Positions 17,046 through 41,000 of a stretch of DNA of 64,000 nucleotides are shown piece after piece. Position 1 is the stretch's first letter, and each line of letters starts with the position of its first letter. The DNA comes from Botryllus schlosseri (lineage: Eukaryota), in NCBI GenBank assembly GCA_051294905.1, contig CM119385.1, positions 12,772,001-12,836,000 on the forward strand. The letters run 5' to 3'. The translations under genes were made by a program, and so were the position numbers. The notes beneath the pieces are model-generated. The model was not told the origin of the DNA. It ran no database searches and saw only the letters and a program-made list of their open reading frames with translations.

Positions 17046-20000
17046 ATGGTAAGCCATTCATCATGACCTGGAAAGTGTTTTCATTCGATTCAGAGGCAGT
17101 TATCGTCTACGATTTGAGTTGGGTTCGATACCGTACATCCAGGTTTTGTTACTGTTTCTCGTTTATTTGAATTCCTCGTAGTGAAATTGCGTTATGGACC
17201 TATTTAGAGTTATTAATGAAATTATTTCATATAAACAAATTGTAATTACGGCATCACACTAATACACTACAAAAAAAATTAGACAAATTTGGTCTCAAAT
17301 TTAAGAAATGAGGATGATTTGGTCTCATTTTCAGCAATTTCAGTCTCACTGATGGTCTCATTTTACCCACTCACCATAAATGCTATTTTCGACTCAGACA
17401 ACCATATATATATTGATCTGAATAGCACATGTGAGTAGTAAGTGGCATGTACCTTGATAACTATATCTAGTGAATACCTTGTAAACTTAGTACAGGATCA
17501 TCTCAACACTGCAATTTCTGGTCTCTCTCATCCTGCCCCTCCTCCGTTCAGACCCCTAACACTGAAAAGGATGCCCCCAAGGCACTGCCACTATTTTCGA
17601 TCAATTTCTGGCTTACTTTTGAGACATAAAGTACTTGGTAAGACTAATTGGTCTTTAAGACTTATTGGTCTTTAAGACTTATTGGTCTTTAAGACTTATT
17701 GGTCTTTAAGACTTTTTTTTTGTAAAAAATCGATTTGAGACCAAATTTGTCTGATTTTTTTTTTGTAGTGTAGTTCCGTAGCTTACGTAACATTTCCGAA
17801 AACGGTACCATGACTGCCATCCATGCCATAATTTAGCAATTCGTGTTTATAGTCAACTGCAGTGTGATGTTGCACCTTTTGATATTTTGTTCATGTTTGG
17901 ATTTTTTTTCAAGCTGCTATCAAGACAGAAACCTGCAATTGGAGGTAATGGTCCTGCACAGGATAAAGAGAAGGTAAAACAGAAATTGCCGAAAGTTGAA
18001 GATCTACTTGAAAATCGCGATTACACTGGTGCAATTACTTTGCTTGAGGTAATTATCAAAACTAATTGATAATATGTATTGCTAATACAATGACACGTTA
18101 GTATTCAGTCCCTATAATAATAGAAGATCGTGTGATGTTTTGATATGATAAAATTATTAATATATTGCACTGAACTGACCAGTGCTAGCCGAGCCCACAA
18201 AATACTTATCGCCTATTGGTTTGTGGTTGAAACTTAACTTAAAGGTTACAGCTTAAGAGCTTAAATGTGTTGCTCTCTTCAATTGAGCAATATGTTAGTC
18301 ATATCATAACTATGATTGATAAAAAGAAACTGTGTGAATACATTGACCTTTTCAAACAGAAATATCGGATACTTTGGTTTTCAGCATCGATCTGAAGACA
18401 TTTAGTGGCATTTCGTTGCCACCGATATGTGTAATAAATAAATATTCTTTGTGGAAGTACCACCTAATCTGTAACTGAGATTAATGGTAGTCTCATAGAC
18501 CTGCATCAAACATAATGTTCAGCAATCTCTAAAGAATGAATTTACTTGTATCATGTATTCTTGATGTATAATTATGCTGTTTAAATTAGACAGACCGTGC
18601 CTTGTTATTTATGTTCTTAGCTATTTATATTTTTTATACATATAGTTTGAAAAACACACCGGCAAGGCAACGGACAGCACAGATTTATGGATCGCATATT
18701 GTTTTTTTCATTTGGGTCAATACAAGAAATGCTATGATGTAAGTACTCATCATTTACTGATTACTTCTAATGGCCATATTACAATGTATTACCTTTATAA
18801 TTTATCATGATAGGTATACCTGGCTTTAAGTCAACGAGGACCGCCAACTTCCAATCTATTGCTGAACTTGGGCTGCTGCTGCTTCTATCTTGGAATGTAC
18901 AAGGAGGCTCATGAGTATTGTAAAAAAGGTACCGTTTTAAAAGCTTAATTTTTCAATGCTGCGATATAGCATCAATCACTACCTTGCAGGGTTGTTACCA
19001 AGTCACAAGGCTCCGAGTCACAAGTCACTCTCACTTTTATAGTTTTGACTCGAGTCAAGTTGAGTCATTTTTAGTTCACCATCGAGTCAAGTCCGGGTCC
19101 AAGTCAGCGAGCAGATGGTCGAGTCCAAGTCATAGTATTATGACTCGAGTCCGAGTCCAAGTCATTGCGTTGACTGCTCATTTTTGTGTTAAATTCTTGT
19201 TAGAACCACTTTTTATAACTCTGTTTGGTGATATCGAATGGTTCGCATTTAAAATATACTAATTTTCCTCACTTTCAACAGTTTCTGGTCACATTTTTAA
19301 GTAGCCTACCAGTAACCTACCAATAGGCGAAATACCAATAGTGTGGTTACTTTTTCTATTCTTTGAAATTACAATGAATTGTCGGTCTTGGCCGTCTGAG
19401 ACTCGAGTCATATGACTTGGTCCGAGTCATGCGCAATGACTCGAGTCCAAGTCGAGTCATTACACAGATTGACTCGAGTCGATTCGAGTCATTTCTGTAT
19501 TTTGAGAAAATGACTCGAATCAAGTTAGAGTCATCCGAAAATCTTGTCAAATGAATCAAAAATTTCTCGACCTCCTGAGTTACGACTCTAATAGTACTGC
19601 ATGCATATTAAATGATTTGTTTCTAACAATTTTATATGCAATTTACAATCCTAGAAACTTATATTGTGCAAAATTATCTTTATGGAATCAAAATGCCTTG
19701 CTGAATTTGGCCGTGTTTAGCGCATACCTGTTTTGCATATTTTACTTGTATTATGTCAGGGATATCTAGATATCCCTGGTATTATGTATACATTATTTAT
19801 ACATGCGCAAAAGGCTTTAATGTGAAAAGCGTCACTATATCTTCTTTCGTTTTTTAACAATAATAATAATGATAATAGTCATTGGCGCTACAGGGGTCGT
19901 GAGCAAAAAACTCATGAGACATATCCAACAAATTCGGGGTAACGTTCGATTCGACATGATCCAAAAGATCACATTATTGGGCACTGTGCACATTCTTCGG

Positions 20001-23000
20001 AAGGCCTTGAATGCACCACTGGACTAAAATTACACTTGTGAATCACAGCATAATTTCTGTAATTACGATTCTTCATCTTCAATCATCTCTACCTCTGCTC
20101 TGTAAACCTTGCCAATTCTTCATCTGCTGCAATTCTGTAATCTGACTTCTCCATGTATTGCATAGGAATAACAATTTGAATGTATTACTGAAATTTTAAA
20201 AATTTACTCCAATCTCGTCATTTTCCTTTGGGGGCAGGTTGCTCCCCGGATTATGTGTGTATCTACCAGTTTTACTGTGAATAATGAATATAATAATAAT
20301 TTATACATGCATATTTCACATATGCTCGTATTTGGACAGTCTGCTTTAATTTTCAATTTATGTATTTCCAGCGGACAAGGGACCATTACAAAACAGACTG
20401 ATGTTCCATATTTCACACAAGGTATGTTGCTCGTCATGCATGATTCAGCTACTCAATTAAATTCTTTTGTCAAGTTATCACTTTCGTTTCTCGTTTGTTT
20501 TTTGTTTCCGTCGTGATTTCTGTTTTATGTTTGTTCCGTTGACTTCAGTTCAGCGATGAGAAAGCCGTCCTCACGTACCACCAACATCTCCAAGACAATT
20601 TTGAAGATCAGCTGAGTCTCGCGTCAATCCATTACATGCGATCACACTACCAAGAGGCTATCGATGTCTATAAAAGGCTTCTGTTAGAGAATAGGTTTGC
20701 ATTAATTTTGCATGATCATTTGATTTGATTTTATAATTTATTTTATTACTGTCGTCGAGGAATCTAAAATGGCGTTATTAGTTGTAAATAAGACATCCTC
20801 TTTCCGTGTAAACTCTCTCGAAGAGATGCTTCTGATTCATAAGAACTGTGTCAAATTCACCAGTTATATTTCTAATTCTGCTTTAGCCCCACCCACCAAA
20901 AATATAGAAAAGGTTATTTGTCATTTTTTTGTTTGTTTGAGATATGCATGGTGTTTTGTCGACTACTATGGTCATTTACACCAGGCCGATATTCTTCCTT
21001 TTTATTCCGCAACTGCCGACTTATAGCACGGCCCACTTCCAGGCTTTTTGTAAGACACCGCTTATGCGGATGAGGTGGCGAGGAGGAGCCTAGATAAACC
21101 TCCAACATTCAGGTATACGAATTCTGAAGTCGACCTTGGTCGGACTCGAACCCACAATCCATTGGTGTTGCAGTCGCGGATTATACCACTGCGCTATCTT
21201 GCCACTCATTTGTCATTTAATGACGTTGCTTGAGTTAATGTGTGTAATTTGGTACCCGGAATGCAGCGAAGTAAGTAATTTGAGCAAGTTATGAAGCACA
21301 GCTCATGGATAGTAGGCAGGTAGCAGACATGTTGAAGAATATGTGATTTTATCATGCGGACATTTGACAATGGTGTCTGAGATTGGTGGATTGTGGCTAG
21401 GACTGTTTATCAAATGTAAAATCTCAGGTATACATCTGTTCCAACCTACAGGTCATAGACAATATCAGGATTTGAAATACTGCGTTTGGATTAGATCGAC
21501 TCCGGGTATAGAAAGATATATTTCAGCACCAATGTACTCTGTCCATTTTTACTATGGTATGTGTGCCTGCTGTATCTAGCTGTAATTGATTAGACTTGAG
21601 GGAGGGACACTGGATAATGCAGTCATTTCGTGTCATATGCATTGAAATGTGAATGGATTGCTGTGATTCTCTGTTTTCATAATGAATGTTAAATCAATCT
21701 ACTGCGGAAAGAGTTTTGAAGTTTGTTCTGTGACAAAATGATCACTGATCAGTCTTGTGTGTAGAAACACAGTAATAGAATTAGTACTTTATGTGATAGT
21801 GACAGTTTCAACAGGCGCCGAATACATCAGTAAACCGTGATATCTCTTATTCAAGTTTGGAGATGAGTTCAATCTGCTCATGCACCATTCGAAATTTGAG
21901 GATTGTCTTTTCGACCAAATGTGCCTAGCCAGTTTGCATTACATGCGAGGACACTACAATGAGTCAGTGAAGATCTTCAAGCAACTGATGACAGACGATA
22001 CCAAAAGGTGAAGCGTTTCAGTCAGAAAGGCAGCGGCACATTTTTTACGTGCATCCTTATCGTCGATACATGTAATATATGTACATTGTACAAGGCTATG
22101 TTTTTGTGACTTGGGGATGAGTATATTCAATGTCCGTCAGTCAGTGATGTCATTATTATTATTGTTGCTACGGTGCTCATATTTATTCGTTAAGCTCTGT
22201 ATAGAATGACAAATGAAGTGAATCTTATTTGGATTCGAAGGAATATTATAACTGATGGGGAACTTGAATACGTAGATTACCGATTCCCTAATCTTGCAAT
22301 AATATTTTTTTCAGGGAATTTCTGGCGCTCAATGTCTACGTTGCGCTCTGCTATTACAAGTTGGACTACTATGATGTGTCCCAGGTCAGTATGTCAGAGG
22401 GTTGCCAAGTAACACTATTATGTACACCGGAGATGAAAGGGGGCCATTTCGAATGTAATCCACATCTTAATGCCTACCTCATATTGGAGGTTGATGTGTA
22501 AAAAGTAAATAGTTTGGCCTCAAAAAGTATCACAGTCGAAGTTGTCTAAAACATAAACACCTAATTATGTAGTGTAATTAGACAAAAACAACTTGGGTAC
22601 TCCTAAAATGGAGAAAACTACTTAGTTTCTGAACAACTCTGGTTCTCTGTTTGTTGTTTAGTAATCGTCTTGCTAGGCTGCTGTTAGGCTTAGGAGGTCA
22701 GATCGGTGTAGTTTTTGTGATCCTGTAGTTGTCTTTGGATTAAGTGTACCACCAGCACACTTTACTGTGTAGATCTGTGTGATCTGTTACCGTGTTGATC
22801 TCGAATGATATGTACTGAGAAATTTGTGGTACCGTTTTTGATTTTTACTTTTAGGAAGTTCTCGCCGTTTACCTCCAGCATTTCCCAGACAGCGCGATCG
22901 CTCTCAATCTAAAGGCATGCAACCACTTCCGACTCTATAACGGTAAAGCCGCAGAGGCCGAACTCAGACACTTGCAAGAGATTGCATCGCCGAGCTTCAC

Positions 23001-26000
23001 ATTTGCGGAAGAACTGCTCAAGCACAATTTGGTTTGTTGAATTTGACCTCTTCATTAAAACAAGCTTAACTGTAGATGTAGTCAAGGTGAAAATTTGAGA
23101 GGTCCAATATTTTTTAATAAATGACATGACTTCACATTGAAAACAAATGACAATATCACAGTCAAAAATCCAGTGTTGCTACTCGAGTGGAAGTAGAAGT
23201 AACAAATAATTTATCCGACTTGGAGAAGTAGCCTAATGATTTGCAAGTGGAAGTAAAAAATAAAAGTACGCAAGTAAGTAGTTTCAAGTAGATTTGGCCG
23301 AGGGTTCGCATGCTTTTAGTGGTAAATCGCAGACTGCTTTTGAAATTGCAGGGTGCATCTCTGTCACTAATGGCACCATGAATCCGTTGTTGAGATCAAG
23401 TCACTACCTTCGAATCACAAGTCAATTCGATTCATTGCACATTTTGTCTCGAGTCAAGTCAAGTCACTCGAACTTTTGAGGTGACTCGAGTCAAGTGTCG
23501 CCAAATAGATGATAGTATATGAACCCTCAGAGAGTTGAAACTAATTTATACGATGGAATACACAATCCATCATCACATCCATACGATGTAATTTAAGCCT
23601 GTACCAATTGTTGACCAGTAATATAAATTTACAAACTAATATATCAGTCCGATTTAAATTATGCTAAAGTTTCGTTAAGAGCAGAGAGACACTGCTGCAG
23701 ATAGAATAGCCTGCTACTAGTAGACAACCTAAGCTCTAATCACTGCGCTTGTGGTCAATTTAATTGAGACTTAGCGACGGAGGTTGAGTTAAACCAGGCT
23801 GCGCAATCTTAGAATGACTGGTCGCTCACACAGGGTGTTGATAATATGTACGGTACGCACAGGTACATCGGCTAAGTTGACACCAATCAATTGATGACTT
23901 GAAATTGACTTGAAAATTTTGCTTCGAGTCACGAGTCAACCCACATTTTTGTGACGTCAAGTCATTTTTGCAAAGTGTCTCGAGTCAAGTCATCTGGAAA
24001 AGTTGACTCGAGTCGTCCTTACGCTGCTATGAATAATGTGCGATTTTCGAAAATAAAATAAGTTACAGGGGCAGTGCTCCTTAGTCGATATGACAATTTC
24101 ACTGGAACGTGATGGAAGCACTTCGGTACTCTTTCTGACCCCCTCTGGTGTTACGTCACTTCAACTGCATGTATCCCACCGGGCAGGTTGTATTCCGCAG
24201 TGGAGAAGGCGCGTTGCAGACGTTACCACCCCTGGTCGACGTTATGACAGAAGCGAGATTGAATTTGGTCATCTACTACTTGAAACAAGGTCAGTCGACA
24301 CCACGACTATTCGAGGGTGTGATATCGAAATGGCGAATTGTTGCAAGAAATGACACAGGGTGACGTTCACTTGGTGTGTTCTTCAGTGTCGAAATTGCGT
24401 ATATGGTCACTATTGTGTGGTGTTCTGTATATAGACTGGTATTTAAAATAGTGGTAGGAAGGACGCTAGATTTTTGTCCTTGATGTTTCTGCGGCATATA
24501 CACTGACTCAGTCATGATAGACATACACACGATCTGTGCATATGCATACTGTGAGTGAATGATGTGCATGCATATGCTGTTGAACAAGGAAGGTGCAGAT
24601 ATGGCCTTGTACGGCATTCTAAGCCTTGCACCACCCCTCCATGCTATTCTGGTAATACTGAGCGCCAAGTGGGGAAGTGATGGATACCAGTGTTACTAAT
24701 CAGGTCTTTGATCTGATCCAGCCGGGGGATTGAACCCACGACCTACCAATCAAGAAGACGGACGTTTTACCATTACGCTGTCTTGTCGGGTAATGTGGTT
24801 CTCAACCTTCGGTCTGCGGACCGGTGGCGGTTCTTGGCAACTTTCCTGCCGGTCCGCCAGATATATCAAAAATTTATATCTCAATATAAAGATGCAAAAA
24901 GTTGGACGCTTTCCTATTAATTAAAGTAATGAAGCATCAGATTTTAAATTGATTTAGAAGTTTGAATCGTATTTTCCTACATGGTGTCTCACAATAGAGT
25001 CGATGGTCTACTTTGGCATTACCATACCTCACAATGCTGCAGAGGTTGTACAAAACTTTAAAAATACTCGTTTTAAACAAAATTTGTTTAAATTTGACAG
25101 CAAAATTTTGTGATATGTGGCAGCTTGATTGTGCTAGCAAAGTGGAAATCGCAGTTTTTCTTAAAAGATACAATCAAAATCAAGATGAAGTTGTGAATAC
25201 TAAGGCATTGATTAGTGATAATGATATCGAATTGGGAAGAGGAAGGTAATAACTTTATAGTACGGTACATGGGATATGCGATGAGCTTGCTGACAGAATA
25301 GATGTGCCAAAAGGATGCATGTCAAACGCTTCTTGCTGAATTTTCACATGGAAACTTACAGCCCTTAAAATGCACCGCCAATGTCCGTTGCAAATATGCT
25401 GCGATTTTTAGGGATTCTGGTGCTCTGAGGTTATTTATTAGATTTTATTAATCAGTGTAACAATATCGTTTGATTAATACCAGTTATTATAAATGATGAG
25501 CTGGTTATGATGAATTGCACTATAACAGGTAAGGCTTGGCCCGTCTGTGACTCACCTGTGACCCTCCTTACCTTTTACACTATATTTTTGAACAATAAAA
25601 ATGCAGATTCCGTGATTTTAGTTGTAAAAATGTTTAAAATTTAGTCATTCACGAATATCGATAGAAAATACCCATAATTATTGGTACGGTGTTATAATTA
25701 CTGAAGGTTTCACAATATTATTTAACTCATCCTGGCGACAGGTCAGGCACAGCCTCAACCACCCCCTGACCGCACGTCACTGCCTTCACTGGATCGTAGG
25801 GCACTGTAGATTTTAAACAGGTTATCAAGAAGGGCAACTGCGTATTTCACTTGACATGACGCTGTACATTGCGGTGCGCGAATCATCTGTCGTTGATTAG
25901 TCATCATCACACGACGGCGTTGGCGCTTTTCGCTATGGTAAACCTTATGCGTCACGACAATGCATAGTATTAATGTTCAGTTGCCTTTGCTTTTTGTGAA

Positions 26001-29000
26001 CTTCTACCACTACCACTCTTGGCCATTCTCTTTCCTGCGCCCTCTTACGCGTTTCCGCAGCCGACATTGAAGCCGTGCTCACTCTTACTTTGGGTCAGTC
26101 GAGACGCTGATACGACTGCGGGATGAGGAGCTCATATAAACCTCCGACACACCAGCTATACAGATTTATAACTGCACCATTGCAGATGAAGCCGCGGGCT
26201 GTTGGTTTTGTACACAAGGGCTACATATTTTTCGGCATTATTGGCTGCTCTTCAAGACTTCACATTCCCTCTTTCATCAAAGAGTCAAATGCAGCTGGTA
26301 GACTATCAAAATGTTTTTAATCCGCGCGAAAGTTTAATAAAAGCTAATTCCTGTTCGTTTTTGCGCCAAGTGATCAGATGAACTGACCGGTTCGTAAATA
26401 TTTACCGCGAAGTTCATGGGCGTGTTTACTAGGGGGGAATTGGAGAATTCGACGGTTATTTTTCGATTCGTACCATTTCAACCAATTCACGTCTCGGATT
26501 TCGACATTAGGTCGGTCACTAAACACATATGAGACCATCCCATTTATATACAATATACATAGTTACGAATACGACATGCCGCCCACTCGCTACACGGTTA
26601 CATATCACGCCCAATCAATACAAGTGCTAGTCATAAGCTGATAAATCATCGATTGCTCTATTATTGACTAACAGTGGAACAATCGTCACAATCACACGAC
26701 ATGCATGATTATCGTGAAGAGAGTATTATTATAGAATGTATTAGTAGTATTATAGCCATTATGTGATCTAACTAGTAGCACAACACGAGCCGTCGACTTT
26801 AAAATGCAACTGGGTTGATATTATGACTTCTCGCTAAGTCCCATAGCGTGGCTGTGAAAATAAAGTCACGTTCTGCCGAAATATAAAAACTCTCATGCTC
26901 ATTACAAATATTAGGGTTCAAAGTTTCTCGGAGCGGACTTTTGGGTGCATTACCATCATTCTAGCCAAATCCGACATGTAAATCCGATAAGCGCACTTTT
27001 GGGTACATTACCATGTAGCCAAATCCGCCATATAAATCCGATATCCCATTACATGTGGAATGTCAAATATGCCACTATTATTGCGAGAACCTATCCTAGA
27101 CCTCTATCCGTGGTATCTCGACGTACTGAATCCATAATTTGATCGATTCATATCATGCAACTGTCGCATTGTATTTCGATCGAGATACGATTTTGGTTCA
27201 CGAATCTTTCACGTCGTTCAGATTTAGATGAATTGAGTATACATACAACAAGAACGACCGTGATGCTTCCGTTCAGGAGTTGTGTTTTAACCGTTTGGGT
27301 CACCAGTTACATTCATTGCGAGTGTGTAGAGTGGACACTGTCCATTGCCTGTCTTACGCTGGCATCCAGTCACGCTCTGCTTTACGCAACCGTGATTTAC
27401 TCTTCTCAACGTGACTTTTCAGTGTATTTATCACGGTGATACATTGTTACGCGGGATTGCGGTGATCGACAATTATGTACTTAATCATCTCTGATTGTCT
27501 ACTGCGTGATTATGATGCGTGTTGGAGCTCGGAATTTCTACTTGCATCACACCATTTGTCGCGTTGGTGGACGGCACAAGTCAGAATTGAACGCCTCAAC
27601 ATCCTTGACATAGTAGTAGTAGTGTTTATCGACTTCCGCTTCCAGCAGCTGTGCTCGTGAACTTGCCATGAGCACCAAGTGCAGCGCCCTGCATAATTTT
27701 TCATAATCCATCATTTGACCTTCCCTAACCGATCGGCGCTTTTAAAAATAATGCGTTAGCTTTGTTGCTGGAAATTCTATTGCATACCAGTATCGATCAA
27801 GGTTACCTGAAGGTCGGAGTATAGGTTTCGAGATATTACGAGTAGCTGCAGTTTTTCGAGCTTTCGATTGTTTGCAAATTGAAAAAAAATCCGCGCCTAA
27901 TGTTACATCAGTTGAATTAACTGTATCGACATTTATACCCGAATAACGAACTTGTTTGTGTGCAATGCAAATTAGAACATTCAGTGCATACTGCACTGCA
28001 CAGTCGTTTGGTTGTGCGAAGGCGGCACTTTGCTACCCCTGTCTACGTCACTGATAACGTTCATGAGCTTTTTTCGTGGGATTGAATGAGACGATTATGA
28101 TATAGAGAAGCCAACTTGAGAGTTATATTGCAAAGTTGGAAATGCCACCCCAATCCTCTGGTATATTCTGATATTGATTGCCAAGTGTTCACATATGCGC
28201 TTATGGACTATGGTACATTGTGCACGCTCTTGTTTGTAATGCAACAGAATATTAGATTCCATATTCTAAAACCCACATTTAAATCCATGGTTTGCATGCA
28301 TGCAAGGACCGGTATATAAACTCACTCGTTCATCGCCTGTTACACAGCGATGGTCAATTGGTCACACGCTTCGTGATAAATACCAGCGGATGTTGGATAT
28401 GTATAGCGAACGCCGAAAATATACTATTCAATCGAACGCTTTTAGCACGAACAATCAAACATCATACATTCAACCCTCATATTCTTGTCAGTGTGCTCTC
28501 AATCTCCGTGACCTCGTCGTCAGCATTCGTCCCGCTTGACCGGAGTCTACTACGTCAGCCTATTGTTCAAGTTGATTTGAAATCGCACAATCGCGGATTG
28601 ACCTGACCTTAGCATTTCGTTAAGGCGTTTTGTTGCTCAAGGCTAGTGGTCGCGATGTACTCCACGCACCAGACGTAAATAGATAAAGCACTTGTTTCGG
28701 CAAAAAAAATGTAATAGAACAGGAATAAAATACAGGGCAATGAACACGTAATCGCGTGGCTTGATGCTAGGCAGCATGATGAATGTGCTGTGCATTGTGC
28801 ATATTCATCGAAGCGGTTTCCCTTGCATATCGGACTCCTGCGCGACATCTTCATACCGATCCTTGCTGTGCGTCGCGTTGACCGTAAAGTAGAATATCCC
28901 ACAACGGGTGTGCCATAGCAGTCCTTCATTTAGGTGTGTACGGCGGGGGCTCCATTGATTCCATAGATTCCGTTACTCCGTTTGGGTTTTGGACGTGCTG

Positions 29001-32000
29001 TTGACACGGAACTATGATGCGACTGTTGGAGGTGTGCGCTTGCGTTGGAGTCTGTGGGTAGGATGGCGGGGAAAGTTCGCCTTTAACACTTTTCGTGAGT
29101 CCGCACGATTCTAATTCGTCGTACGTCGGCGGGTCAGCGCATACCACATTCGTAAGAGTGGGTTCGAATGCCGCGCTTGCTTCAGCACCTGATAAGTTAA
29201 GGTCACTTCGTGAACGCACAGCCTTATATTGATTTATACACGCCGACAGAGCGCAGTTATTTATAGCGAGGCTTCTTTCTGAACCAACGCGAATCACAAT
29301 GTTCTGGGTTGGGTCAGCTGTTCGAGATAAGTGAGGCGACAATAGCGGCTAAATTGATACTTACATCGTCTTTGTCTCTCTCGAAGTATCATCATTCGCC
29401 TCTTGCGCACTGACCTCGCGCCGCTTATGAAAAGGCAAAGTAATATCGCGACCACAGCAACTCCCATTACGTACGCTTGATATGAACTAAAAACGGAAGG
29501 TGATTCGTTATTAGCCGAAAGGGAACGTGATAACAACGTCGATGAGTTATATGCTGTTATGTTCATTGTTTACACAAGCTGCACCATGGCCTATCTTTAT
29601 TAAGAATCGCAATCGTTGTCGCACTTGGATTAGGATACAAAGCGAAACAGAAATATATTCGAGATTGTTCGATTCGTTAAGCGATAACTAATCCAATCGG
29701 TATGTTTCCACTATTTCCAAACGATTACGATAATTGATCGACTTCATGGTAACGTGTCTCACCCCGTGTCCCATCCTGACGTGTGATGAAGATGGAAGCC
29801 CGCGTCCTTTAATACGTCGCAGCACATCGCACCCTGTTCGAGTTCGATGTACGGCGCTGTCACTGTGCCAGAGCAACAGGCGTTTCTAATGCTGTCCGAT
29901 GCTTCATAAAGATCTTTTCGTAAAAAGAAGGCAGCGTCGCAGCTCATTTCCGTTCGAAAATCATGGCAAATCACTGCAAACTTTTCCATAATTGATTGTG
30001 GTTGATGCACACAATGAACTAGTACGTTACTTGTGATCGAAAACTGTAAACAGAGAATTTAGATTTAGCACAAGAACCGGCAAATGGGTCTACTAATGCC
30101 ACCCCACAGCGTTCACAACAACCGCCTAGAACCGTCTCTGAACCTACTTTATTATGATTCGCTCTACCAAACAACGCAACGCTCCATTGAAATTCTTGTA
30201 GTCACGTGACAGTGACGTCACATTATTTGATAAACGCTAGCCTCTGGGAGTTACGCTGTATCTGTCAAAACAATCTTCTACCTATACATTGTCTCGTTTC
30301 GAAGTTGCCTTTTTATAACGCACGGTACAGTTTTGTGCTGTAACTGCCGCACACTGTGCTGTTCATCGCGTTTTCATAATAAAGCCTTCGCTTCAAGTCA
30401 TGTATTTAAACGATCGTCTTTCTACCGAGCCGATCAGCTGATAGAATGTTGTCGGTTTCGTATTTCGCCGCCGCTTGATTTGTCTGCGGCATTCGACTGG
30501 TCCACACCGCTCTAAACCAGCGCGCGTAGCAGCTGCAGTTGCTTAGCGATGGAACTTACAGCGGATTGCCCGAGCCATCCACGGCGACATTAACGTTTCT
30601 TATGAATATTCTGATGTTAACTCGCGGTACGTAACACTACTGAAGCAACCATTCGACCTTATCGACTTCCCTGAACAGGCTGTCACGAAAAATACTAACT
30701 CAGCTTTTGGGCGTTGTAGGTAGATGTAGCACAGACCCTGTGCAAATATTGAACGGATTCAATACCTCAAATTGACATTGTGCTTCTTTCGCTTCAGTGA
30801 CTAGTTACTAATTACACGGCCGCCGGCCTCAGTGCAACGTCTGTTAGTTAGGTCTATACAGCGAACTAGATACCCTTCCGTATATTGTTTGAAGCTAATG
30901 GGAGCATTAACGATTGAAGCCCCTACGTTCAATTTCGCCTCTGTTGCTCCCGGTTGTTTTGTATGAGTTACGCCACTGTTAATTCTCTTCGCCCCCAACC
31001 TGTCGGCTTTTATTTCAAGTTATTTTGCTTCGTGCAGCCTACCAAAATCAAGCGGTCATTCAGTTCACTCATTACGTGCCGTTGCGTAAGAAAACCCGGC
31101 TACCTTTTCGCGGCGAAATATTACCGAACTAACAACAGGATATAACGCTCATACATAACTATGTTCGCACCCGGCGTAGCCATTGTTGCCTATATACGTC
31201 ATGCGCTTTTGCATGTTTTGATCCTAAGCTTTGCACACTGCAATAAATAGCGCACCAACGCAGCACTATCTCTCCATCGACGACAATTTCCGTTGCTTGA
31301 ATAGCCACGGGATATTTTTCCCAGTCAGAACACCGCGTTGGTCTCAAACTAGCTGTGTTCGTGATTATATTGACGTAATGTGGTGTAATGTCCTGAACTT
31401 GTCGAGGTTATAATTTACATAATTTCGAACGCTAAGTTACTAGCGATGCAGCATCGCTGAAACGATGTTATGCATAAGCTTGCCATGTGCAATGCATGGC
31501 ATTTTCCCTGAAGTAAATAACGCCCGTCACTTGATATAATGAAATTAAGACTGCCTTTCGATGCATGCACTCATCAATTTGAGAGTTGCCCCAGCACTTA
31601 TATGACTAAAATTCATTACGCTATCGATTTTCTGGGCCGCATTGTTAATTTTTCATAGACGCCGTGGCGTTGCATTGAAGCTTTCCGCCTAGCCATCTGT
31701 TATTCCCTCGCCTGTCTTACAACTGCTGGAGTTGATTTCAGTTTGTGCGCGTGTTGGTTATGCTCCTTATTTCCGGCTTAACTCTGCGGCATTCGCTGCT
31801 GTTCAAGCCCACTCGCGCTGTGAACGCTTTGGTGAAGTCAGCCATTGCTCTCACCTTATTGAATCTCATGTGATTCACGCACTAGATTCGAAACCAGCTC
31901 CTAGGTAACATGCGTTTCCGTAGTTGGGAAGCGAATGACTGCAAGTTACATCACCCACCGTATAACCGATGCCTCATTAAGGCGTCATCATCATCAAAAT

Positions 32001-35000
32001 ATTGCAATCTGCTAAACCTGTTTGCATTTACAATTGCGGCATATTTGTAAATGCTTGTACTACGCTATGAATTTATCTGCTAGCGATACCAACTGTACAA
32101 TTCCTTCTATTAGCTCTGTACAAAGTATCAGTTTGCCAATCAATATCAATGCTGATACCGGGAGGAGTGATTGCGTAGTTTCATTGGTCGATGAATATTT
32201 CATGCCTGCAAGGTAATACAGTTTTCGGGAATATACCTATTTTCCCCGGCCTGCATAATGAGCGCTTTCTGTTGTCGCCTAATTCCTGTATCTGCATTGG
32301 ATTCAAGCAACCGCACATAAAATTAGCGAAATACTGATGCAGTTCTGTCTTCAGATGATATCCTGGAAGCTTACAATCTTATCAAAGACATCGACCCTTC
32401 CACGCCGCAAGAGTACATTTTGAAAGGAGTCGTTAACGCATCCCTCGGACAGGAGCAAGGCTCGGTAATTATGCACTATCTGTGGGGTGCCTTTATTTTG
32501 TACATGCAAGCTAATGAAAAGCTAATGCAGCTAATTAAGCTAAGGAAAAGCTAAGTAAGCTAATGAAAAGCTAATTAAGCTAATGAAAAAGTAAGCTAAT
32601 GAAAAGCTAATGAAGCTAATTAAGCTAATGAAAAGCTAATGAAGCTAATGAAAAGCTAATTACGCTAATGAAAAAGTAAGCTAATGAAAAGTAAGCTAAT
32701 GAAAAGCTAATTAAGCTAATGAAAAGCTAATGAAACCAGCGAATGTAAAAATGAAGCCAAGGAAGTAAGTCCAGGTTAGTATTTTGCTCATATGATTCTG
32801 GATGTATCAAATCCGAAATTTTAAATCCAAGTTTACAATCTGGATATTCGATTCTCAATAGGGATTTTTGAATTATGATTGCAATAGTGCCAATTCAGAC
32901 TTAACTGCACCCTGCAAACCGGAAGATTTGACGACACCGACAGGTTTGTTTTGAGGTGTTCATGGTGTGTCTCGACCAGCACTGTAACTGCCGCACCCCT
33001 AACCCCCCAATTGGGGGGGGGGGCGAGCTCGAAGGGGGCCCAAAATTATTTCGTGAATTAGCATAAATCATAGAGTATTTTTTGAAAATTTATGCAATTT
33101 TTTCGCGCTGCGCGCGAATTCAAGTAGCCTTTTATCTATATTATTGGGCATTGGCCATTACCGCGCCACCACCCACCAATACATACAATCAAGACATGAG
33201 ACTCCAAGAAGTGTGCCAGAACGATCGGCAGCGAGAAAAGCGTGGCCGAAAAGGTCTACGCCATTATGCAGACCGAAGACTTCATTATATCTACAAAATA
33301 CATATAGGTTTAATTGTCCATAGGCTCCTAAATGACTGGCGCCGAATGTTCCTGTCTTTGCAATCTGAACCTCACAAGACACATATCATCCCGCTGGGAA
33401 AAGTTTTATGCCAGTGAAGAAATACCATTTTGAAATCGTGTGCGTCTTTTAGTTTAGAAGCCTACGTTTGGACGATTCTATACTTTTTGATATACCAGAC
33501 TGGAAGTCACGAAATAATATCATGTAACGAGGTCATATCAACGGGTCCGCCCGCCCGAAGATGTTTAATCATTATTTACGGGCCCTCCCGTTTTCAAGAC
33601 ACTTCAGCCAGCTCCACCGGTACATCTAATGACGTGAGTAGAGAGGACAATAAATTGATAGCATAAATATATGCAATCGCCGATCTGATTGACCGATTTT
33701 ATCATAAATCATCGAAAATTTTCGCGCTTCGCGCTGGCTCACAATGCGGTACAGATAATTTCGTGACAAACGCGAACAACGTGATGGGGGAGGGTCGTTT
33801 TATCACCCTATGGGAGCCCAAGTCCCACGTTTTTTGGGGCCTGACGAGGTGCTGTTTCGTTCCTGACAACGGGTATACCCCCGAAGATGTTTAATTATTA
33901 TTGAGTGGTCCTATACCTTTTCAAACACACCTCACTCAGCTCTACCGGCAAATCTGATTACGTGAGCAGGGAGAAGATAAAAATTGATAACAATATATGC
34001 AATTCCCGATCATACTGCCCGATGAAATCATGAATTCTATAAATTTTCCGCGCTTCGCGCGCTTAGGCGACAGAAGCTGATTCACTAAACAAACTCGCAA
34101 TGTATATGATGAATAGCGGTAAAAGTGTATCGCCGGAGGGGGGTGTGGGGGGCGAAGCCCCCAAGAAGTTCGGTCTATAACCCTATGGGGGGGGGCCCAA
34201 GACCAAATTTTTTTTGGGGGGGGCTGACGAAGTGCTGTTACGGCCCTGGTCTCGACTAATATGGTCATGGTCATGGTCATGGTCATTTACACCAGGCAAT
34301 TTTCTACATTTCTATTCCGTAGCGGCCGACTTGTACAACGGCCCACATTCTTGGCTTTTATAAGACACCGCTTACACGGATGAGATGGCACCTAGGTCGG
34401 AATTCTGGAGTCGACCTCGGTCGGACTCGAACCCACAACCCATTGGTGTTGAAGCTGTGGATTATACCACTACGTTATCTCGGCACTACATACAGCGGTG
34501 ATCTCTGACGAAGTTTTTCTGCCTACTCGGTGCTGAAGTGCCAACACGCCTAACATGATAATGTGGCCGGTTATGTTTGCAAACTGAATTTGATAGCGTG
34601 AACGAACATGAACATCAACGACATTTCAAAGGGAGTTCATTTCTTGATGGTAATTAGTTAGGAAGGCAAGGAGGATTTGAAAACAGCATTGTCTCACAAG
34701 CTCCAGCATGCCTGCTATCAATCAACGCATCATACAAAACTGGATTAACCCGTTTCGGCACGCGATATGTCTGGTAAACCGAATTCGCGTGGATATTGGT
34801 TGCGAGCTTGACAGTAATTTTTATTTTACAAATAAACTTCACATCATGATCGACAGATTATAATTTAGATTATTGATCGTTTTCTTTAGAACTGAATCAT
34901 TCTGCGCATAATTTCAAAATTGGGAAGACTTCTTTTTCGTTACCTTTGCGAAACCTAAATGACGTACTAGTGAGACATCGGCACCATTGTCATCCTGATA

Positions 35001-38000
35001 ATGAGTAATGAGTAAACTAACGTTTAAAACGTCCGGATATGTACTACTTTGTAATTGCATATATTTGCTGCGCTGAATTGGGATATTCACGTATCATTTC
35101 TGCTTTATAATATTTCACAGGGAGGGGCAAGGTATAGCCTATCGACTAGCGAGTCGTAACGCATTGACGCTCGTGATCTTTTATTATAATATCCGACAAG
35201 AATAATGCTTAGCGCGGAATATACTTGACTAGTTCCGCTTTATTTCGCTTGAATGTATTCACAGCTCCGCAGCTGCAAAACGAATTGGTTGGGAGTTCGA
35301 ATCAGGCCCAAGTCGGTTCCAGTATTCCTACCCAAGTGTTTCTGGTTTATGTAGGGTGTGGGCTTGTACTGCTCGTACGATCCGCGTAGACGGTGTCTTG
35401 CAAAGGCCCCGACCCATAATAGTCGGTGGATCAGGAACCGTAATAACGAATACCAGCCTGGTGTAAAATGACCAATGACCATCCTATAGTACTAGAAACA
35501 CCATTAATACCAACCTACTACGTTAGTGTGACCACTGACCACTGATAAGTGTGACTAACTGTCTCTAACATTAATTTTGTAATTCACATATAGGTGGCTT
35601 TTCATTAGCTTTTCATTAGCTTTTCATTAGTTTACTTAGCTTTTCATTAGCTTAATTAGCTTCATTAGCTTTTCATTAGCTTACTTTTTCATTAGCTTAA
35701 TTGGCTTTTCATTAGCTTTTCATTAGCTTACTTAGCTTTTCATTAGCTTTTCATTAGCTTACTTAGCTTTTCATTAGCTTCATTAGCTTTTCATTAGCTT
35801 ACTTTTCATTAGCTTACTTTTTCATTAGCTTACTTTTTCATTAGCTTACTTAGCTTTTCTTTAGCTTAATTAGCTTCATTAGCTTTTCATTAGCTTACTT
35901 TTTCATTAGCTTAATTAGCTTTTCATTAGCTTACTTAGCTTTTCATTAGCTTAATTAGCCTTTCATTAGCTTAATTAGCTTTTCCTTAGCTTAATTAGCT
36001 GCATTAGCTTTTCATTAGCTTGCATGTACAAAATAAAGGCACCCCTATCTGTGTGTAGCCGCAAACTGCCCGTGCTGTTTAACGGCGAAGCCCATCTGTC
36101 CGCGTTGTTGTACGTTTGAATTTGATGTTATGGAAAATATTTGCCTCGTCATCTAGAGAGACCGCAGCGACCACACGACAAACAATTTTCAAAATATTGA
36201 TTCCGATAGACATGTTTTCCTACACTCCTTCCGTTTCAAACTATCCACCTCATTTTCAAGATAATCTTCCCCGCTATCTGTTGATACAATCGCGATGCCC
36301 CACTATTATAGCCGAATCTCCCGTCAATGCCGCGGGGCGATATCTTTGTTGTTATTTTCTCGCCTTTTCTGGTCGTTCTCGGCTCTTTGTTGTGAAACAG
36401 AACGCTCGTCACGTGACTTGAACAGCGTTGTTATTTTTCAGAGAGAACACTTGAAGATCGCTCAACAGTACTTTCAGCTCGTCGGAGGGTCTGCGAGCGA
36501 GTGCGGTGAGCATTTGGCGGGTTATTTCAGTCGCTCGCAATGTCGCTAATCCGTTGATAACACGATAGGTTTAAAAGATTTACGTTATCACCCCGCGCAT
36601 GGCTGGCCGTGGTCCCGAAATTGATAGAGAGAAACAGCTAATGTTTGCTCTATGCTCAATGGTAATCAATGTCGCTTGCGTAAATATGGGGCGCGAATGG
36701 CCCAGATGTGATCAAAGTTATCATCGTTGGTGCTGAAATAGAATCAACATAGTGTTTCTCCAAAGGAGCCACGATACGTCCTACTTCGAAATTGTGTGGA
36801 TATTGGTGTATCGGCATGACTTCAAGAATAATTCCTTGACGGAAAAAAACAGATTTGAGTATCGGCCGATATCGAGATTATGTTCGATGCCGAGATTTCT
36901 TGAAATCCTCTACGCCGGTGCGGATACGAAATTTAAAAACGAACTTGCCGAAAGTGCGTGATGGTTTGAACCTGCCCATTCCTGCCTTATGATTTTGTTC
37001 CTCATTTCGCCATGAGCTCCATTCCACTAATTGCGGGCTTTGTCCTAAAACTTACTTGACGATCGGGTCTCTTACAGCAATTGTGACGCGTCATTGGAAA
37101 CCTTTTTTGTCCAATGTGACCAATTGTCATCCGGGAAACTATAGTATCCGGTGCATTTACGATTCCGCATTTCAGAGTGCTAGATGTTCTCATGTGATAA
37201 AACTCTAGATATCAAATATATGCTTGGTGTAACATTCTGGTCGTTCAGTAATCATCCCGTTCGGACTTGAATACCGTAAAATTGGACCGAAAATCGCCAA
37301 AATATTGACAACTTCGACATTTCGGTTCTGCGCCTGATGTACCATGTTTATCTCGCTTTCAGAAATAAGCCGTTAGTGTTATTACAATCCAACTCTATTG
37401 ACTTTTGTTTACCACTTATTTGGTGCCATAGGCTTATTCATCGCTCCATATGATAGCGTATAAATCATAACAAAAACAATAAGATATACGGTGGTTTGGT
37501 TTTTGTAGCTACCAACAAAATACAAAACTTGATATCTGTAAGCCGTAACCGCACACCATAGAAAGCACCGACTTCGTGATTTCGAGATGTTATTTCTCTG
37601 CGTCGTCTACATGTTCGTGACGAATTTCCAACGCATTGCAAATGTTTACAAAGTATCGCGGTTGTCTGTGAAATAACCAAACGTGTTTACTGTTCAGGCA
37701 TTCAGGAATGGTATGAGTGAATTCATGAAACTCCCAAACATCTTTCGAGAATTACCAGCGCGGGGTGGCAAAAGCCGTTTGTGACCCTCCAGTTGTGGCA
37801 TCGAGTATTTTACGTTAGTACCGCACGTGGCGAGATAGCGTAGTGGTATAATCCACGGATGCAACACGAATGGTCTACTGGTACGCGACCGAGGTTAGCT
37901 CAGACATTAGCTCAGAATTCCTACCTAAGTGTTGGAGTTTTATCTGGGCTCCTCCTCGCCATGTGATTCGTGTAAGTGGTGTCGTACAAAAGCCCAGAAG

Positions 38001-41000
38001 TGGGTCGTGCTACAAGTCGGCAGATACGGAATAAATATGAAGAATATCGGCCTGGTGTAAATGACCATTGCAGTCGACAAGCACTATGAATACCACAAAC
38101 AAACCGTTGATTACGCCACATTTTATCTGTCGATTCATCGAAATTTCTCGCCCCTACTAGCTTTTATTCAGTTTTCGCCCGTCGGTACCATCCGTTTGCG
38201 GAAGATTGCAGTGTAACATAGTTGATTTTTCAACCCTGGGTAGCTTTCAATTTGTTGCGGGTTGAATTCTAGATCGCGGTACTGCTACTGGCGGGGTCTA
38301 TTTCATTGCGTTAGCACTCACATTCGGCCCAATATACCTGGGTCATTCTCGGACCAAAATGTACCTCAGTCTTCAAAACCGGTATAATGAGTGTATGCCC
38401 TTTTATCCATAACTTGCCTGGCTCTCGGAACATATGAAACACGTTGAGTGAGCACGGCCTCAGGGAATATACAAATTAAGTAACGAATGGGGCGAGGGTG
38501 GTCTCGGCCCGATAATAGAGCTTCTCGGGTATAAACGCAGCAAAATTGGTTAGTTCGCGGTCGATTAGGGTTACATTTTTATCTCTAATTTCGCAGGCGA
38601 AAAGCTGATCAAGATCATGCTTTCGACTTATTCGCCACCGTGACAAACATGTCAGTTACAAGACTACACATTAGCTGTTGGCTTTCACCTTGTGTGCTTC
38701 TCAGTAAACTACACTGATTAGTCAATTGGACCACTAGTGTCTGTATATGCAGGGATATCTAGATATCCCTGTGTATATGTACTGTATAGGTCATCACTAA
38801 CGCCGACTTTGAGACTAGTGTCTCCCTATTGAACTGGCCAGTTCGCGGTTAAAACTGCTGGATGGATATTACTTCGGGTTGTTGAGAGAGTTTTGTAAGT
38901 TACCCTATTCTCTCGCAGACTACTCATCGCGCCTGTCTTTGTGTGATTCGACTCCTTGCGGTGTTGATTTCCAATTCGCGTGTTACCTTTATGACAAAAT
39001 ACCACCCGTCTTGGAATTTGTTGTTACGCGCTGCTGCGTTGCGTAATCGCTTGCTACGCAAAAATGCGAGTGATACAGCACATTTCTGGGGAAATGCGCA
39101 CGGCTCATGATTTCATGATCTCACAGTTGCCTAACAGAGTTCATGTGCTGTAAAGCGAAGAGACGCGCCTAAGCGTTTGATAATGATAAACATGGTCGGT
39201 GCGAACGCGCACGGATCGCTCAATGGCTAAAAATAGAGCTATTAAATCGTCCTCAACTAGACATCTGTTGACATCGTACCCCTTACTTGTATTGTGTTGT
39301 ATATCTTGAATTTCAAAATCATCAGAAATCCCAACTGAGAACGGTCAATATTGCCACAAAGAAACCAATCTCAAACCCGTTTCCGTAATCGTGATGCCCA
39401 TTTCTTTGTACGACTTCACTGGCAAGTCTATTTATTACATGATAAAATCAGTAATTGATTTGGATTCTACCTGATGAACTGCAGAAGTAGGCTCAACTTC
39501 AAACCGCTTCAGTAACTAGAATGTTAAATGTAAGCTATACGCGAATTTAGTCGAATTTAGTTATGCCCAGTGTTAATCAAAGTAGTTATTGCTGCTCGAT
39601 TAGAAGTAGAATTGACATCTTAAATGTCTACGCAAGTACAAGTATAGGTAATAATTTCCAAGTAAACATCGTGGACTTAGTTTAGACTAGAAAAACTGAA
39701 ATCTACCTCTAGTTATACTTCCGAACTGACTCTTTCTATGTTTAACGGTGAACTATTGATTTGAATATGTTTGGCATTATATAACACAGCACACATTGAA
39801 ACGGGAACGGGAACGATAGACGTACAAACAAGGAATGCCCCACTCTAAAAACAAGGTTCAATCCTGGCGCCTTTCTTTGCTGGGATCTTGTAGATCAGTG
39901 TGTGTATTCGTCGAAACGGGAATTTCGCACATTCAAATAAATGGATACACCTAACCGAAAACCAGGTTGTTCCCGGCAAGCATTTGCAATGTAGCGCAGG
40001 CGCTTGTTTACTCTCTCGAATCCGCGATTGCGGTGCAATTTTTCTCTCCTATCATATATACGTCACTCGCATTGTCTGCCGCATACACTTTTTGTAAATA
40101 CCGGTATTGCACTATCATGGAGTACGCTAATATTTGCGTCCGCAGGCATGATACCTCAATGATAATGTCAAGGGTATATATTAGGGCTGTTCAAAAAAAA
40201 CTTTTTTCCTGAATCTTGCTGGCTAAGTGATTGAATCGTTAGGTTGCCTTAAAAAACGACGCACACCAAATTTGACTTCATTCCATCCGGTAATCGCGGA
40301 TTTCTTACAGTTTGAAAATTTTGAATTTACTAAAAAAATGCAAAGATAATTTTTTTTCAAATTTTTCTGTCAACTAAATGAAATTGTTGCGCTGTCTTCA
40401 AAATCGATGCAAAACAAAATTTGACTCAATTCCAACCCGTAGAAGCGGAGTTATTTGAGTTTTTCCATGATAATTCCTGGATTATCCACCGATCAAGGAT
40501 AATCCCAGAATTATCAAAGAAGATTGAGTCAAATTTGTTTTGCATCGTGTTTGAAGACAGCGCAACAATTTCATTTCGTTGACAGAAAAATTTGAACAAA
40601 AATTATCTTCGCATTTTTTAGTAAATTCAAAATTTTCAAACTGTAAGAAATCCGCGATTACCGGTTGGAATGAATCCAAATTTGGTGTGCGTCGTTTTTT
40701 AAGGCAACCTAACGTCTTAATCACCCAGCCAGCAAGACTCAGGAAAAAACAGCCCTGGTATATATATGATACACGCGAATTGTAGAGTGTGTGTCCACTG
40801 TTCAGTTTCTCGCGCGTAGCCCTAAATATTGACTGGGAAAGTCTTTATTACATCGCAGTAAACATGACGGCTTCTCCGAAACGTATCGCCGCCAGTCGTT
40901 GCCACCTCATAATTTAAAGTCTGTAACTGGGCAATAGATATTTCAGCGGTTGGTAATGTGGCTTTACCACGCGGCATAGGCTTTAGCGTCCTAATCCCAG

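What the first reader, a model, noticed from the sequence alone, without database searches (positions are those of the whole stretch)
21856..22007. Hidden tandem-duplicated, frame-enforced mutually exclusive exon in IFT56/TTC26
Seen: 1.16 kb after exon 6a (20549-20694, [48 protein letters not shown]) sits a second exon with AG/GT sites and the same phases (0 in, 2 out), encoding [50 protein letters not shown]. It aligns gap-free at 20/48 identity, with many conservative swaps (I/V, Y/F, L/M, Q/E, E/D), a 2-aa extension and no stop. Including both exons or skipping both shifts the frame, so only one-of-two splicing yields protein. Established: IFT56 is a TPR subunit of IFT-B1 needed for ciliary cargo transport, and 6a is the copy matching the human sequence as I recall it. 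Inference: an old, selected duplicate that swaps one TPR surface, perhaps giving sperm/motile-cilium versus sensory-cilium IFT trains different cargo binding. I know of no described mutually exclusive exon in IFT56. The ORF track misses it entirely.
Basis: partly seen in the sequence, partly recalled or inferred. Interest (0 to 1): 0.88.

Follow-up and report, generated by a model that had tools for sequence, protein, structure and literature searches.

The report
Mutually exclusive duplicated exon in IFT56
An invertebrate gene for the cilium-building protein IFT56 carries two diverged copies of one exon, and its messenger RNAs use exactly one of them, giving two versions of the protein that differ in one helical repeat; this splicing type is familiar but I found no report of it for this gene.

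Summary
Exon 6a (20549-20694, 146 nt) and exon 6b (21856-22007, 152 nt) both have AG/GT sites and the same phases. They align without gaps at 20/48 residues (BLASTP E 4e-16).

With either exon alone the 16-exon IFT56 gene reads open (554 or 556 aa). With both or neither, stop codons follow.

Assembled RNA contigs of public run X1 contain both spliced forms. Exon5-6a-exon7 has depth 36.6 and exon5-6b-exon7 has depth 21.3; the sum matches constitutive exon 8 (57.1). Run X25 has a 448-nt contig joining exon 5 to 6b. Only 2 RNA runs hold 6b words, against 14 or more that hold words of the wider exon 5-7 stretch, so 6b use looks restricted.

The duplication is old and 6b has stayed under coding constraint. 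Synonymous sites are saturated (pS 0.78, pN 0.38), and second codon positions match at 37/48 against 20/48 for third positions. 6b keeps all 16 near-invariant residues of the family.

6b replaces a short helix and one TPR, mostly on helix B. Amphioxus has no 6b. No close relative could be fetched, and the samples' tissues are unknown. The sperm-versus-sensory idea is untested.

Verdict: a new member of a known kind.

The parts
17046..46393 (+). IFT56/TTC26 gene. Candidate start codon at 17046-17048, then 15 further coding exons: 17914-18048, 18646-18738, 18814-18928, 20372-20421, 6a or 6b, 22315-22384, 22855-23031, 24187-24289, 32355-32464, 36442-36505, 41142-41230, 41741-41894, 44132-44238, 44299-44432, 46279-46393 (stop).
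   Evidence: tblastn of vertebrate and amphioxus IFT56 gives 13 HSPs at about 64% identity. All internal boundaries are AG/GT and the spliced frame is open: 554 aa with 6a, 556 aa with 6b. Exon 1 is only a candidate (ATG followed by gtaag).
20372..20421 (+). Constitutive exon 5 (50 nt). Its donor at 20421 is shared by both splice choices.
   Evidence: RNA contigs show junctions 20421>20549 and 20421>21856.
20549..20694 (+). Exon 6a, the canonical variant (146 nt, 48 aa plus 2 nt).
   Evidence: It is 75-79% identical to exon 6 of other animals. An X1 unitig of 202 nt, depth 36.6, joins exon5-6a-exon7. X23 raw reads show 2 junction reads from exon 5 to 6a.
20695..21855 (+). Intron of 1161 nt between the two variants. 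It holds a very abundant interspersed repeat at about 20955-21205.
   Evidence: No RNA junction joins 20694 to 21856 in any of the four runs. Depth over the repeat reaches about 10,000 in X1 with many sequence variants. The intron flanks of 6a and 6b are not alignable.
21856..22007 (+). Exon 6b, the alternative variant (152 nt, 50 aa plus 2 nt).
   Evidence: An X1 unitig of 208 nt, depth 21.3, shows junctions 20421>21856 and 22007>22315. An X25 contig of 448 nt, depth 6.6, joins exon 5 to 6b. There is no stop, and all 16 near-invariant family residues are kept. Its acceptor is weaker: aag, with pyrimidine fraction 0.56 against 0.68-0.72 at neighbouring exons.
22315..22384 (+). Constitutive exon 7 (70 nt). 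Its acceptor is shared by both splice choices.
   Evidence: Junctions 20694>22315 and 22007>22315 are both in X1. Junction 22384>22855 to exon 8 is in X1 and X23.

Best explanation
Exons 6a and 6b are an old tandem duplicate of one IFT56 exon, and they are spliced in a mutually exclusive way. Every productive mRNA carries one of them. This yields two IFT56 proteins that are identical except for residues about 131-178/180.

On a model of the amphioxus orthologue, this region forms a short helix followed by one complete TPR (helix A, turn, helix B) in the N-terminal third of the TPR superhelix. 6a is the default, canonical form. 6b is a regulated form seen in a minority of RNA samples.

6b keeps the fold-defining and invariant polar residues, and helix A is 8/13 identical to 6a. 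It rewrites most of helix B (4/14 identical), the preceding short helix, and the following loop (+2 aa). Some of the changed residues are strongly conserved in all other IFT56 proteins: E19F, Q35N, D39K, R43Q, N48D.

Shown here: the duplication, the splice junctions, the frame logic and the coding constraint.

Inferred: (1) mRNAs with both or neither exon are removed by nonsense-mediated decay, which enforces the one-of-two rule. (2) The swap changes an outer surface of IFT56, and with it a contact to a neighbouring IFT-B1 subunit, adaptor or cargo, in the cell types that choose 6b.
For: - Homology of the two exons: E 4e-16, gap-free.
- Equal phases, AG/GT sites and the frame analysis.
- RNA: X1 holds separate unitigs exon5-6a-exon7 (depth 36.6) and exon5-6b-exon7 (depth 21.3), all junctions GT..AG. 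Their sum, 57.9, equals the depth of constitutive exon 8 (57.1). X25 holds a 448-nt contig with the 5>6b junction. No 6a>6b or 5>7 junction appears in any run.
- Restricted use: 14 RNA-type runs hold words of the exon 5-7 stretch. Only X25 and X1 hold 6b words, and X2 of the same study holds none. X23 raw reads show only 6a.
- Constraint: codon-position identity is 22/37/20 of 48, pS 0.78 (saturated) against pN 0.38, and the intron flanks are unalignable.
- 6b keeps all positions that are 85% or more conserved in 161 distinct orthologous segments.
- The two polymorphisms listed in 6b are both synonymous third-position changes, like those in 6a and exon 8.
- Structure mapping: the AlphaFold2 model of the amphioxus orthologue (pLDDT 88) has helices at 138-146, 152-164 and 168-181 across exon 6, and the 2-aa insertion falls in the loop after helix B.
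Against: - The RNA evidence rests on assembled contigs from two runs of one 2015 study. The only raw-read run with coverage showed 6a alone, at very low depth (6% of the run sampled).
- Tissue or stage of the samples is unknown.
- No orthologous 6b was found anywhere. Amphioxus has a single exon 6 and a 490-nt intron with nothing 6b-like. The protein databases returned no 6b-type sequence. The one protein closer to 6b than to 6a is from a zoosporic fungus-like organism, so it is not an orthologue of 6b.
- No protein-level evidence for the 6b isoform.
- The role of nonsense-mediated decay and the altered binding are inferences.
- No residue-level interface is known for this part of IFT56.
Confidence: 0.8

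Rival explanations
1. 6b is spliced in, but it is a lineage-restricted, functionally near-equivalent variant. Its use would reflect splice-site competition or noise, not a selected isoform with a distinct role.
For: No orthologue of 6b was found outside this genome, and it is absent in amphioxus. Its acceptor is weak. It is undetected in most RNA runs.
Against: It makes up about 37% of transcripts in X1 and is the only form recovered in X25. Synonymous sites are saturated while second codon positions are 77% identical, and every invariant residue is retained. This pattern is hard to reach without long purifying selection on 6b itself.
Confidence: 0.13
2. The 6b-containing RNAs come from a second IFT56 paralogue elsewhere in the genome, or from an assembly artefact, and not from alternative splicing of this locus.
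For: The evidence is from short de Bruijn unitigs. The flanks of the X1 6b unitig are only 24 and 30 nt.
Against: The flanks match exon 5 and exon 7 of this locus. The X25 contig runs 448 nt from 6b upstream through exon 5 and beyond, with no mismatch on the laid part. The 6a and 6b depths sum to the depth of shared exon 8. All junctions sit on GT..AG sites of this locus.
Confidence: 0.03
3. 6b acts mainly as a regulatory exon. Its inclusion together with 6a would create a premature stop that lowers IFT56 output, so the 6b-only mRNA would be a by-product.
For: Inclusion of both exons shifts the frame and gives early stops.
Against: No 6a>6b junction was seen, and the 6a-only and 6b-only forms account for all of the exon 8 depth in X1. 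A purely regulatory exon would not keep an open frame, the TPR signature and all invariant residues.
Confidence: 0.04

Closest known systems
Homologous mutually exclusive exons arising from tandem exon duplication (human 'tandem duplicated exon substitution' events, PMC9741552; human MXE catalogue, PMC5740500)
   Same: Adjacent homologous exons with the same phase and nearly the same length. One of the two appears in each mRNA. The isoforms are identical except for a homologous segment that keeps the fold. The duplication is old and both copies are constrained.
   Different: The gene: TTC26/IFT56 does not occur in the supplementary lists of either paper as held in the library. This event is in an invertebrate and is absent from amphioxus. 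Its age and phylogenetic spread are unknown.
ATE1 exons 7a/7b and insect Dscam1-type clusters, where competing RNA base-pairing selects one exon (PMC7797038, PMC6071210)
   Same: Two homologous exons are chosen exclusively. A site downstream of 6b (22205-22223) is complementary to one site upstream of each variant (20456-20472, and 21206-21217 with 12/12 pairs).
   Different: The pairings are short, AT-rich and within chance expectation for 1.9 kb. No conservation test was possible. The non-multiple-of-three exon lengths already give a frame-based explanation for exclusivity.
Canonical IFT56 (TTC26/DYF-13), a TPR subunit at the periphery of IFT-B1. It binds IFT46 and is linked to import of inner dynein arm and motility proteins (PMC10191852, PMC9753473; PDB 8BD7 chain E)
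   Same: The window encodes a full-length orthologue, about 64% identical to vertebrate and amphioxus IFT56. The 6a isoform is the conserved form.
   Different: No isoform that replaces a TPR has been described for IFT56 in the papers searched.
Amphioxus (Branchiostoma belcheri) IFT56 isoforms X4/X5
   Same: Another tandem duplication of a coding exon in the same gene, giving two proteins of equal length (556 aa) that differ only in a homologous segment.
   Different: It affects the last coding exon (the C-terminal 37 residues), not exon 6. It is therefore a choice between alternative terminal exons, and an independent event.

Membership tests
Homologous mutually exclusive exon pair (tandem exon duplication) | Neighbouring exons are homologous to each other | tested here: met
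   20/48 identical, 33/48 similar, gap-free, E 4e-16. They are reciprocal best hits in the window and there is no third copy.
Homologous mutually exclusive exon pair (tandem exon duplication) | Same splice phases and canonical splice sites, so the exons are interchangeable | tested here: met
   Both are flanked by AG...GT, enter in phase 0 and leave with 2 extra bases. Lengths are 146 and 152 nt.
Homologous mutually exclusive exon pair (tandem exon duplication) | Mature transcripts contain one exon or the other, not both and not neither | tested here: met
   X1 has unitigs 5-6a-7 and 5-6b-7. X25 has a 5-6b contig. No 6a>6b or 5>7 junction appears in four runs. The two depths sum to the exon 8 depth. 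Caveat: contigs can drop rare forms.
Homologous mutually exclusive exon pair (tandem exon duplication) | Each single-exon form keeps the reading frame | tested here: met
   The open frames are 554 aa and 556 aa. Inclusion of both or neither gives early stops.
Homologous mutually exclusive exon pair (tandem exon duplication) | Both copies are maintained by selection or conserved in related species | tested here: inconclusive
   Within-genome signals favour constraint. No close relative could be retrieved. The exon is absent in amphioxus and there are no 6b-like proteins in the databases.
IFT56 / TTC26 / DYF-13 | Full-length sequence orthology to IFT56 with TPR architecture | tested here: met
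   13 exon HSPs cover residues 1-553 of vertebrate and amphioxus IFT56 at about 64% identity. The amphioxus orthologue matches PDB 8BD7 chain E, IFT56, at E 1e-224 and folds as an all-helical TPR solenoid.
MXE clusters controlled by competing RNA secondary structures (docking and selector sites) | A docking site complementary to one selector per variant exon, above chance and conserved | tested here: inconclusive
   Site 22205-22223 pairs with 21206-21217 (12/12) and with 20456-20472 (14/17). By my own rough estimate (no shuffle control was run on this region), about 0.1-1 perfect 12-mer pairs would arise by chance in 1.9 kb of AT-rich intron. Conservation is not testable here.
Frame/NMD-enforced mutual exclusivity | Exon lengths are not multiples of three, so double inclusion or double skipping creates premature stops | tested here: met
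   146 and 152 nt. Stops follow in both aberrant forms. Actual degradation by nonsense-mediated decay is not testable with these tools.

The most novel reading that the evidence does not exclude
6b is an ancient, clade-wide exon that defines a second, cell-type-specific IFT56. The cell type could be sperm or another specialised cilium. On this reading its rewritten outer TPR surface changes which adaptors or cargoes (such as inner-dynein-arm or other motility complexes) dock on the periphery of IFT-B1. That would be the first case of an IFT-B core subunit being retuned by homologous exon switching. A second tandem exon duplication in amphioxus IFT56 would hint that this subunit is a recurrent site of such tuning.
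Probability: 0.25. Interest if true: 0.72.

Novelty: new member of a known kind. Interest (0 to 1): 0.52.

Why it matters
IFT trains are usually treated as having one fixed subunit composition. How different cilia types in one animal load different cargo is an open question. IFT56 sits on the exposed, cargo-facing edge of IFT-B1 and is tied to import of motility components.

A constrained, sample-restricted isoform that keeps the fold but replaces conserved surface residues of one TPR is a natural experiment. It marks a small surface of about 50 residues that evolution has found worth having in two versions. It also gives a clean handle, exon-specific knock-out or probes, to ask whether IFT-B itself is specialised between cilium types.

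If 6b turns out to be species-restricted or functionally equivalent to 6a, it is just one more tandem-exon isoform.

Tried and rejected
1. A search for 6b-type sequences in other organisms gave nothing.
- phmmer of the 6b peptide against 1.84 billion representatives gave 219 hits, all 6a-like except P0002 (classified). P0002 is from Amoeboradix gromovi, a zoosporic fungus-like organism, so it is not an orthologue of 6b.
- A word-index search with 6b found no candidate.
- A JGI metagenome scan found none.

2. Attempts to reach close relatives of the source species failed.
- The nearest full-length representative turned out to be a gecko entry, and the search returned vertebrates and amphioxus only.
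- A search with 6a returned only fragments at 80% identity or less, the identity expected of vertebrate exon 6.
- Two attempts to build a profile from the window's exon peptides on a scaffold failed, because MAFFT aligned the TPR fragments to each other.
- As a result no dN/dS on orthologous 6b could be computed.

3. Contigs fetched for fragments P0114, P0015 and P0047 were short or from distant taxa and showed one exon 6 each. P0114's contig reads a stop codon inside the conserved exon-6 segment, which suggests a ciliate-type genetic code.

4. ARAGORN found no tRNA in the abundant intronic repeat.

5. Scan notes gave nothing bearing on this gene, and word searches for taxon names failed.

The amphioxus orthologue was folded instead.

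7. The paralogue/artefact and poison-exon readings were considered and rejected (see rivals).

Full report
**Observation**

- Exon 6a is 20549-20694 (146 nt). Exon 6b is 21856-22007 (152 nt).
- Both have an AG acceptor and a GT donor, begin in phase 0 and end with two extra bases.
- They are separated by a 1161-nt intron.
- The peptides align without gaps at 20/48 identical and 33/48 similar residues, BLASTP E 4e-16 for the pair.
- A sensitive tblastn of the whole window finds no third copy and no duplicate of any other exon of the gene.

**Gene model**

I used vertebrate and amphioxus IFT56 proteins recovered from the databases as guides and rebuilt the gene on the + strand.
- A candidate ATG lies at 17046-17048, followed by 15 coding exons from 17914 to the stop at 46393. 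All internal exon boundaries are AG/GT.
- With 6a the product is 554 aa. With 6b it is 556 aa. Both frames are open to the natural stop.
- With both exons, or with neither, the frame shifts and stops follow within a few dozen codons.
- The protein is about 64% identical to vertebrate and amphioxus IFT56 over its whole length.
- 6a is the canonical version: 75-79% identical to exon 6 of other animals, against 42-48% for 6b.

**RNA evidence**

Public runs labelled with the same organism were found by shared 31-mers, and four of them were laid on 20340-23060.

Run X1 (RNA, assembled contigs) holds two separate unitigs.
- A 202-nt unitig of depth 36.6 joins exon 5 to 6a to exon 7.
- A 208-nt unitig of depth 21.3 joins exon 5 to 6b to exon 7.
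- All four junctions fall on the predicted GT..AG sites: 20421>20549, 20694>22315, 20421>21856 and 22007>22315.
- This is the bubble expected from a mutually exclusive pair. The two depths sum to 57.9, the depth of the contig covering constitutive exon 8 (57.1). The two forms therefore account for essentially all transcripts, about 63% 6a and 37% 6b.

Run X25, from the same study, holds a 448-nt contig of depth 6.6.
- It joins 6b to exon 5 and continues upstream.
- No 6a contig was laid from this run. The tool warns that holes in contig data prove nothing.

No run showed a 6a>6b junction or an exon 5>exon 7 junction.

Run X23 (raw reads, 6% of the run sampled) showed only 6a, at a depth of a few reads. 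Run X33 did not cover the gene.

In the index, 14 RNA-type runs hold words of the exon 5-7 stretch. Only X25 and X1 hold 6b words, and X2 of the same study holds none. So 6b is real, correctly spliced, and apparently used in a minority of samples. What those samples are is hidden.

**Age and selection**

- Between 6a and 6b, nucleotide identity is 55%.
- By codon position, 22, 37 and 20 of 48 sites are identical.
- The proportion of synonymous differences is 0.78, which is saturated, so dS is undefined. The proportion of non-synonymous differences is 0.38.
- The introns flanking the two exons cannot be aligned.
- If 6b had drifted neutrally for the time needed to saturate third positions, second positions would not remain 77% identical.
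- I compared 6b with 161 distinct orthologous exon-6 segments. It keeps every position that is 85% or more conserved: D3, E4, H11, D16, D20, Q21, L24, A25, S26, H28, Y29, R31, H33, Y34, E36 and K42.
- 6b changes hydrophobic core positions only conservatively: L22M, I27L, A37S, I38V, Y41F, L45M.
- 6b replaces several otherwise strongly conserved polar residues: E19F, Q35N, D39K, R43Q, N48D.
- The polymorphisms listed in 6b (21927, 21966) are synonymous third-position changes, as are those in 6a and exon 8.
- Together these results indicate an old duplication, with 6b itself under long coding constraint.

**Structure**

An AlphaFold2 model of the amphioxus orthologue (mean pLDDT 88) places exon 6 at residues 135-182.
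- It forms a short helix (exon positions 4-12), a loop, helix A (18-30), a turn, and helix B (34-47) of one TPR.
- The two extra residues of 6b fall in the loop after helix B.
- Identity between 6a and 6b is 8/13 in helix A, 4/14 in helix B and 3/9 in the short helix.
- The radical changes at positions 35, 39, 43 and 46 are spaced three to four residues apart. On my reading this puts them on one face of helix B.
- From general TPR architecture, helix A lines the inner groove and helix B the outer surface. I infer that 6b keeps the groove and rewrites an outer stripe. This is my own inference, not a measurement.
- The literature places IFT56 on the flexible, cargo-facing edge of IFT-B1, bound through IFT46 and linked to inner dynein arm import (PMC10191852, PMC9753473).
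- The IFT46-IFT56 pair is the minimal binding unit for ANKRD55 (bioRxiv 10.1101/2024.03.18.584613).
- No residue-level interface for this part of IFT56 is published in what I could read. The only solved structure is the low-resolution train model 8BD7.

**How exclusivity is achieved**

- Both introns are ordinary GT-AG, and the 1161-nt spacing excludes steric hindrance.
- The exon lengths make every non-exclusive product carry premature stops. Frame enforcement with nonsense-mediated decay is therefore the simplest mechanism. This is inferred, not tested.
- 6b has the weaker acceptor: aag, with pyrimidine content 0.56 against 0.68-0.72 at neighbouring exons. This fits a default 6a and an activated 6b.
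- A candidate docking/selector arrangement exists: 22205-22223 is complementary to 21206-21217 and to 20456-20472.
- Three TGCATG motifs cluster around 6a, where 0.45 are expected (uncorrected p about 0.009).
- Both of these observations are weak and unconserved so far.

**Comparison and novelty**

- This is a textbook homologous mutually exclusive exon pair. The kind is well known.
- I found no report of it for IFT56/TTC26. No paper combines the gene with mutually exclusive exons. The gene is absent from the supplementary tables of two human catalogues as held in the library.
- Amphioxus has one exon 6 and a 490-nt intron with nothing 6b-like, so the event is not shared by all deuterostomes or bilaterians.
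- The only database protein closer to 6b than to 6a is from Amoeboradix gromovi. This reflects shared residue states, not orthology.
- I could not retrieve any close relative of the source species, so the phylogenetic depth of 6b is unknown.
- Amphioxus IFT56 has its own tandem duplicate, of the last coding exon. It gives isoforms X4 and X5, of equal length.

**Verdict**

The mutually exclusive splicing is shown by RNA contigs. Coding constraint on 6b is well supported from within the genome. The functional speculation (sperm or motile against sensory cilia, different cargo) remains untested. This is a new member of a known kind, of moderate interest.

Noticed in passing
window 20955-21205: An interspersed repeat in the 6a-6b intron is extremely abundant in all four RNA runs. 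Summed contig depth reaches about 10,000 in X1, with many sequence variants and internal deletions. By eye it ends in a tRNA-like segment on the minus strand, but ARAGORN calls no tRNA. It is probably a transcribed SINE family.
   Followed up: partly
L004 10982-11092 and 12423-12533 (Branchiostoma belcheri IFT56 locus): The last coding exon of amphioxus IFT56 is tandemly duplicated. The annotated isoforms X4 and X5 (P0262, P0263, both 556 aa) differ at 12 positions, all within the last 37 residues. This is an independent homologous-exon choice in the same gene.
   Followed up: partly
window 22205-22223, 21206-21217, 20456-20472: A site in the intron after 6b is complementary to one site upstream of each variant exon (12/12 and 14/17 pairs). 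The two upstream sites resemble each other. It could be a docking/selector system, but it lies within chance expectation, and the 21206 site abuts the repeat.
   Followed up: partly
window 20437, 20709, 20945: Three TGCATG (Rbfox-type) motifs lie 16 nt after exon 5, 15 nt after exon 6a and inside the intron. That is 3 observed against 0.45 expected, uncorrected p about 0.009, and none lies near 6b. The first two sit in a 12-nt imperfect inverted repeat that brackets exon 6a.
   Followed up: partly
window 44239-44298: There is a very short 60-nt intron between the coding exons 44132-44238 and 44299-44432 of IFT56. It ends in TAG, which serves as its acceptor.
   Followed up: no
window 19000-19520 and 23400-24020: Clusters of short GACTCGAGTC / GAGTCAAGTC-like palindromic repeats occur in two IFT56 introns. 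They look like copies of one repeat family.
   Followed up: no
L001 6598-7918: A metagenome contig encodes an almost intron-free IFT56 whose conserved exon-6 segment contains an in-frame stop codon at a conserved position. This suggests a ciliate-type genetic code.
   Followed up: no
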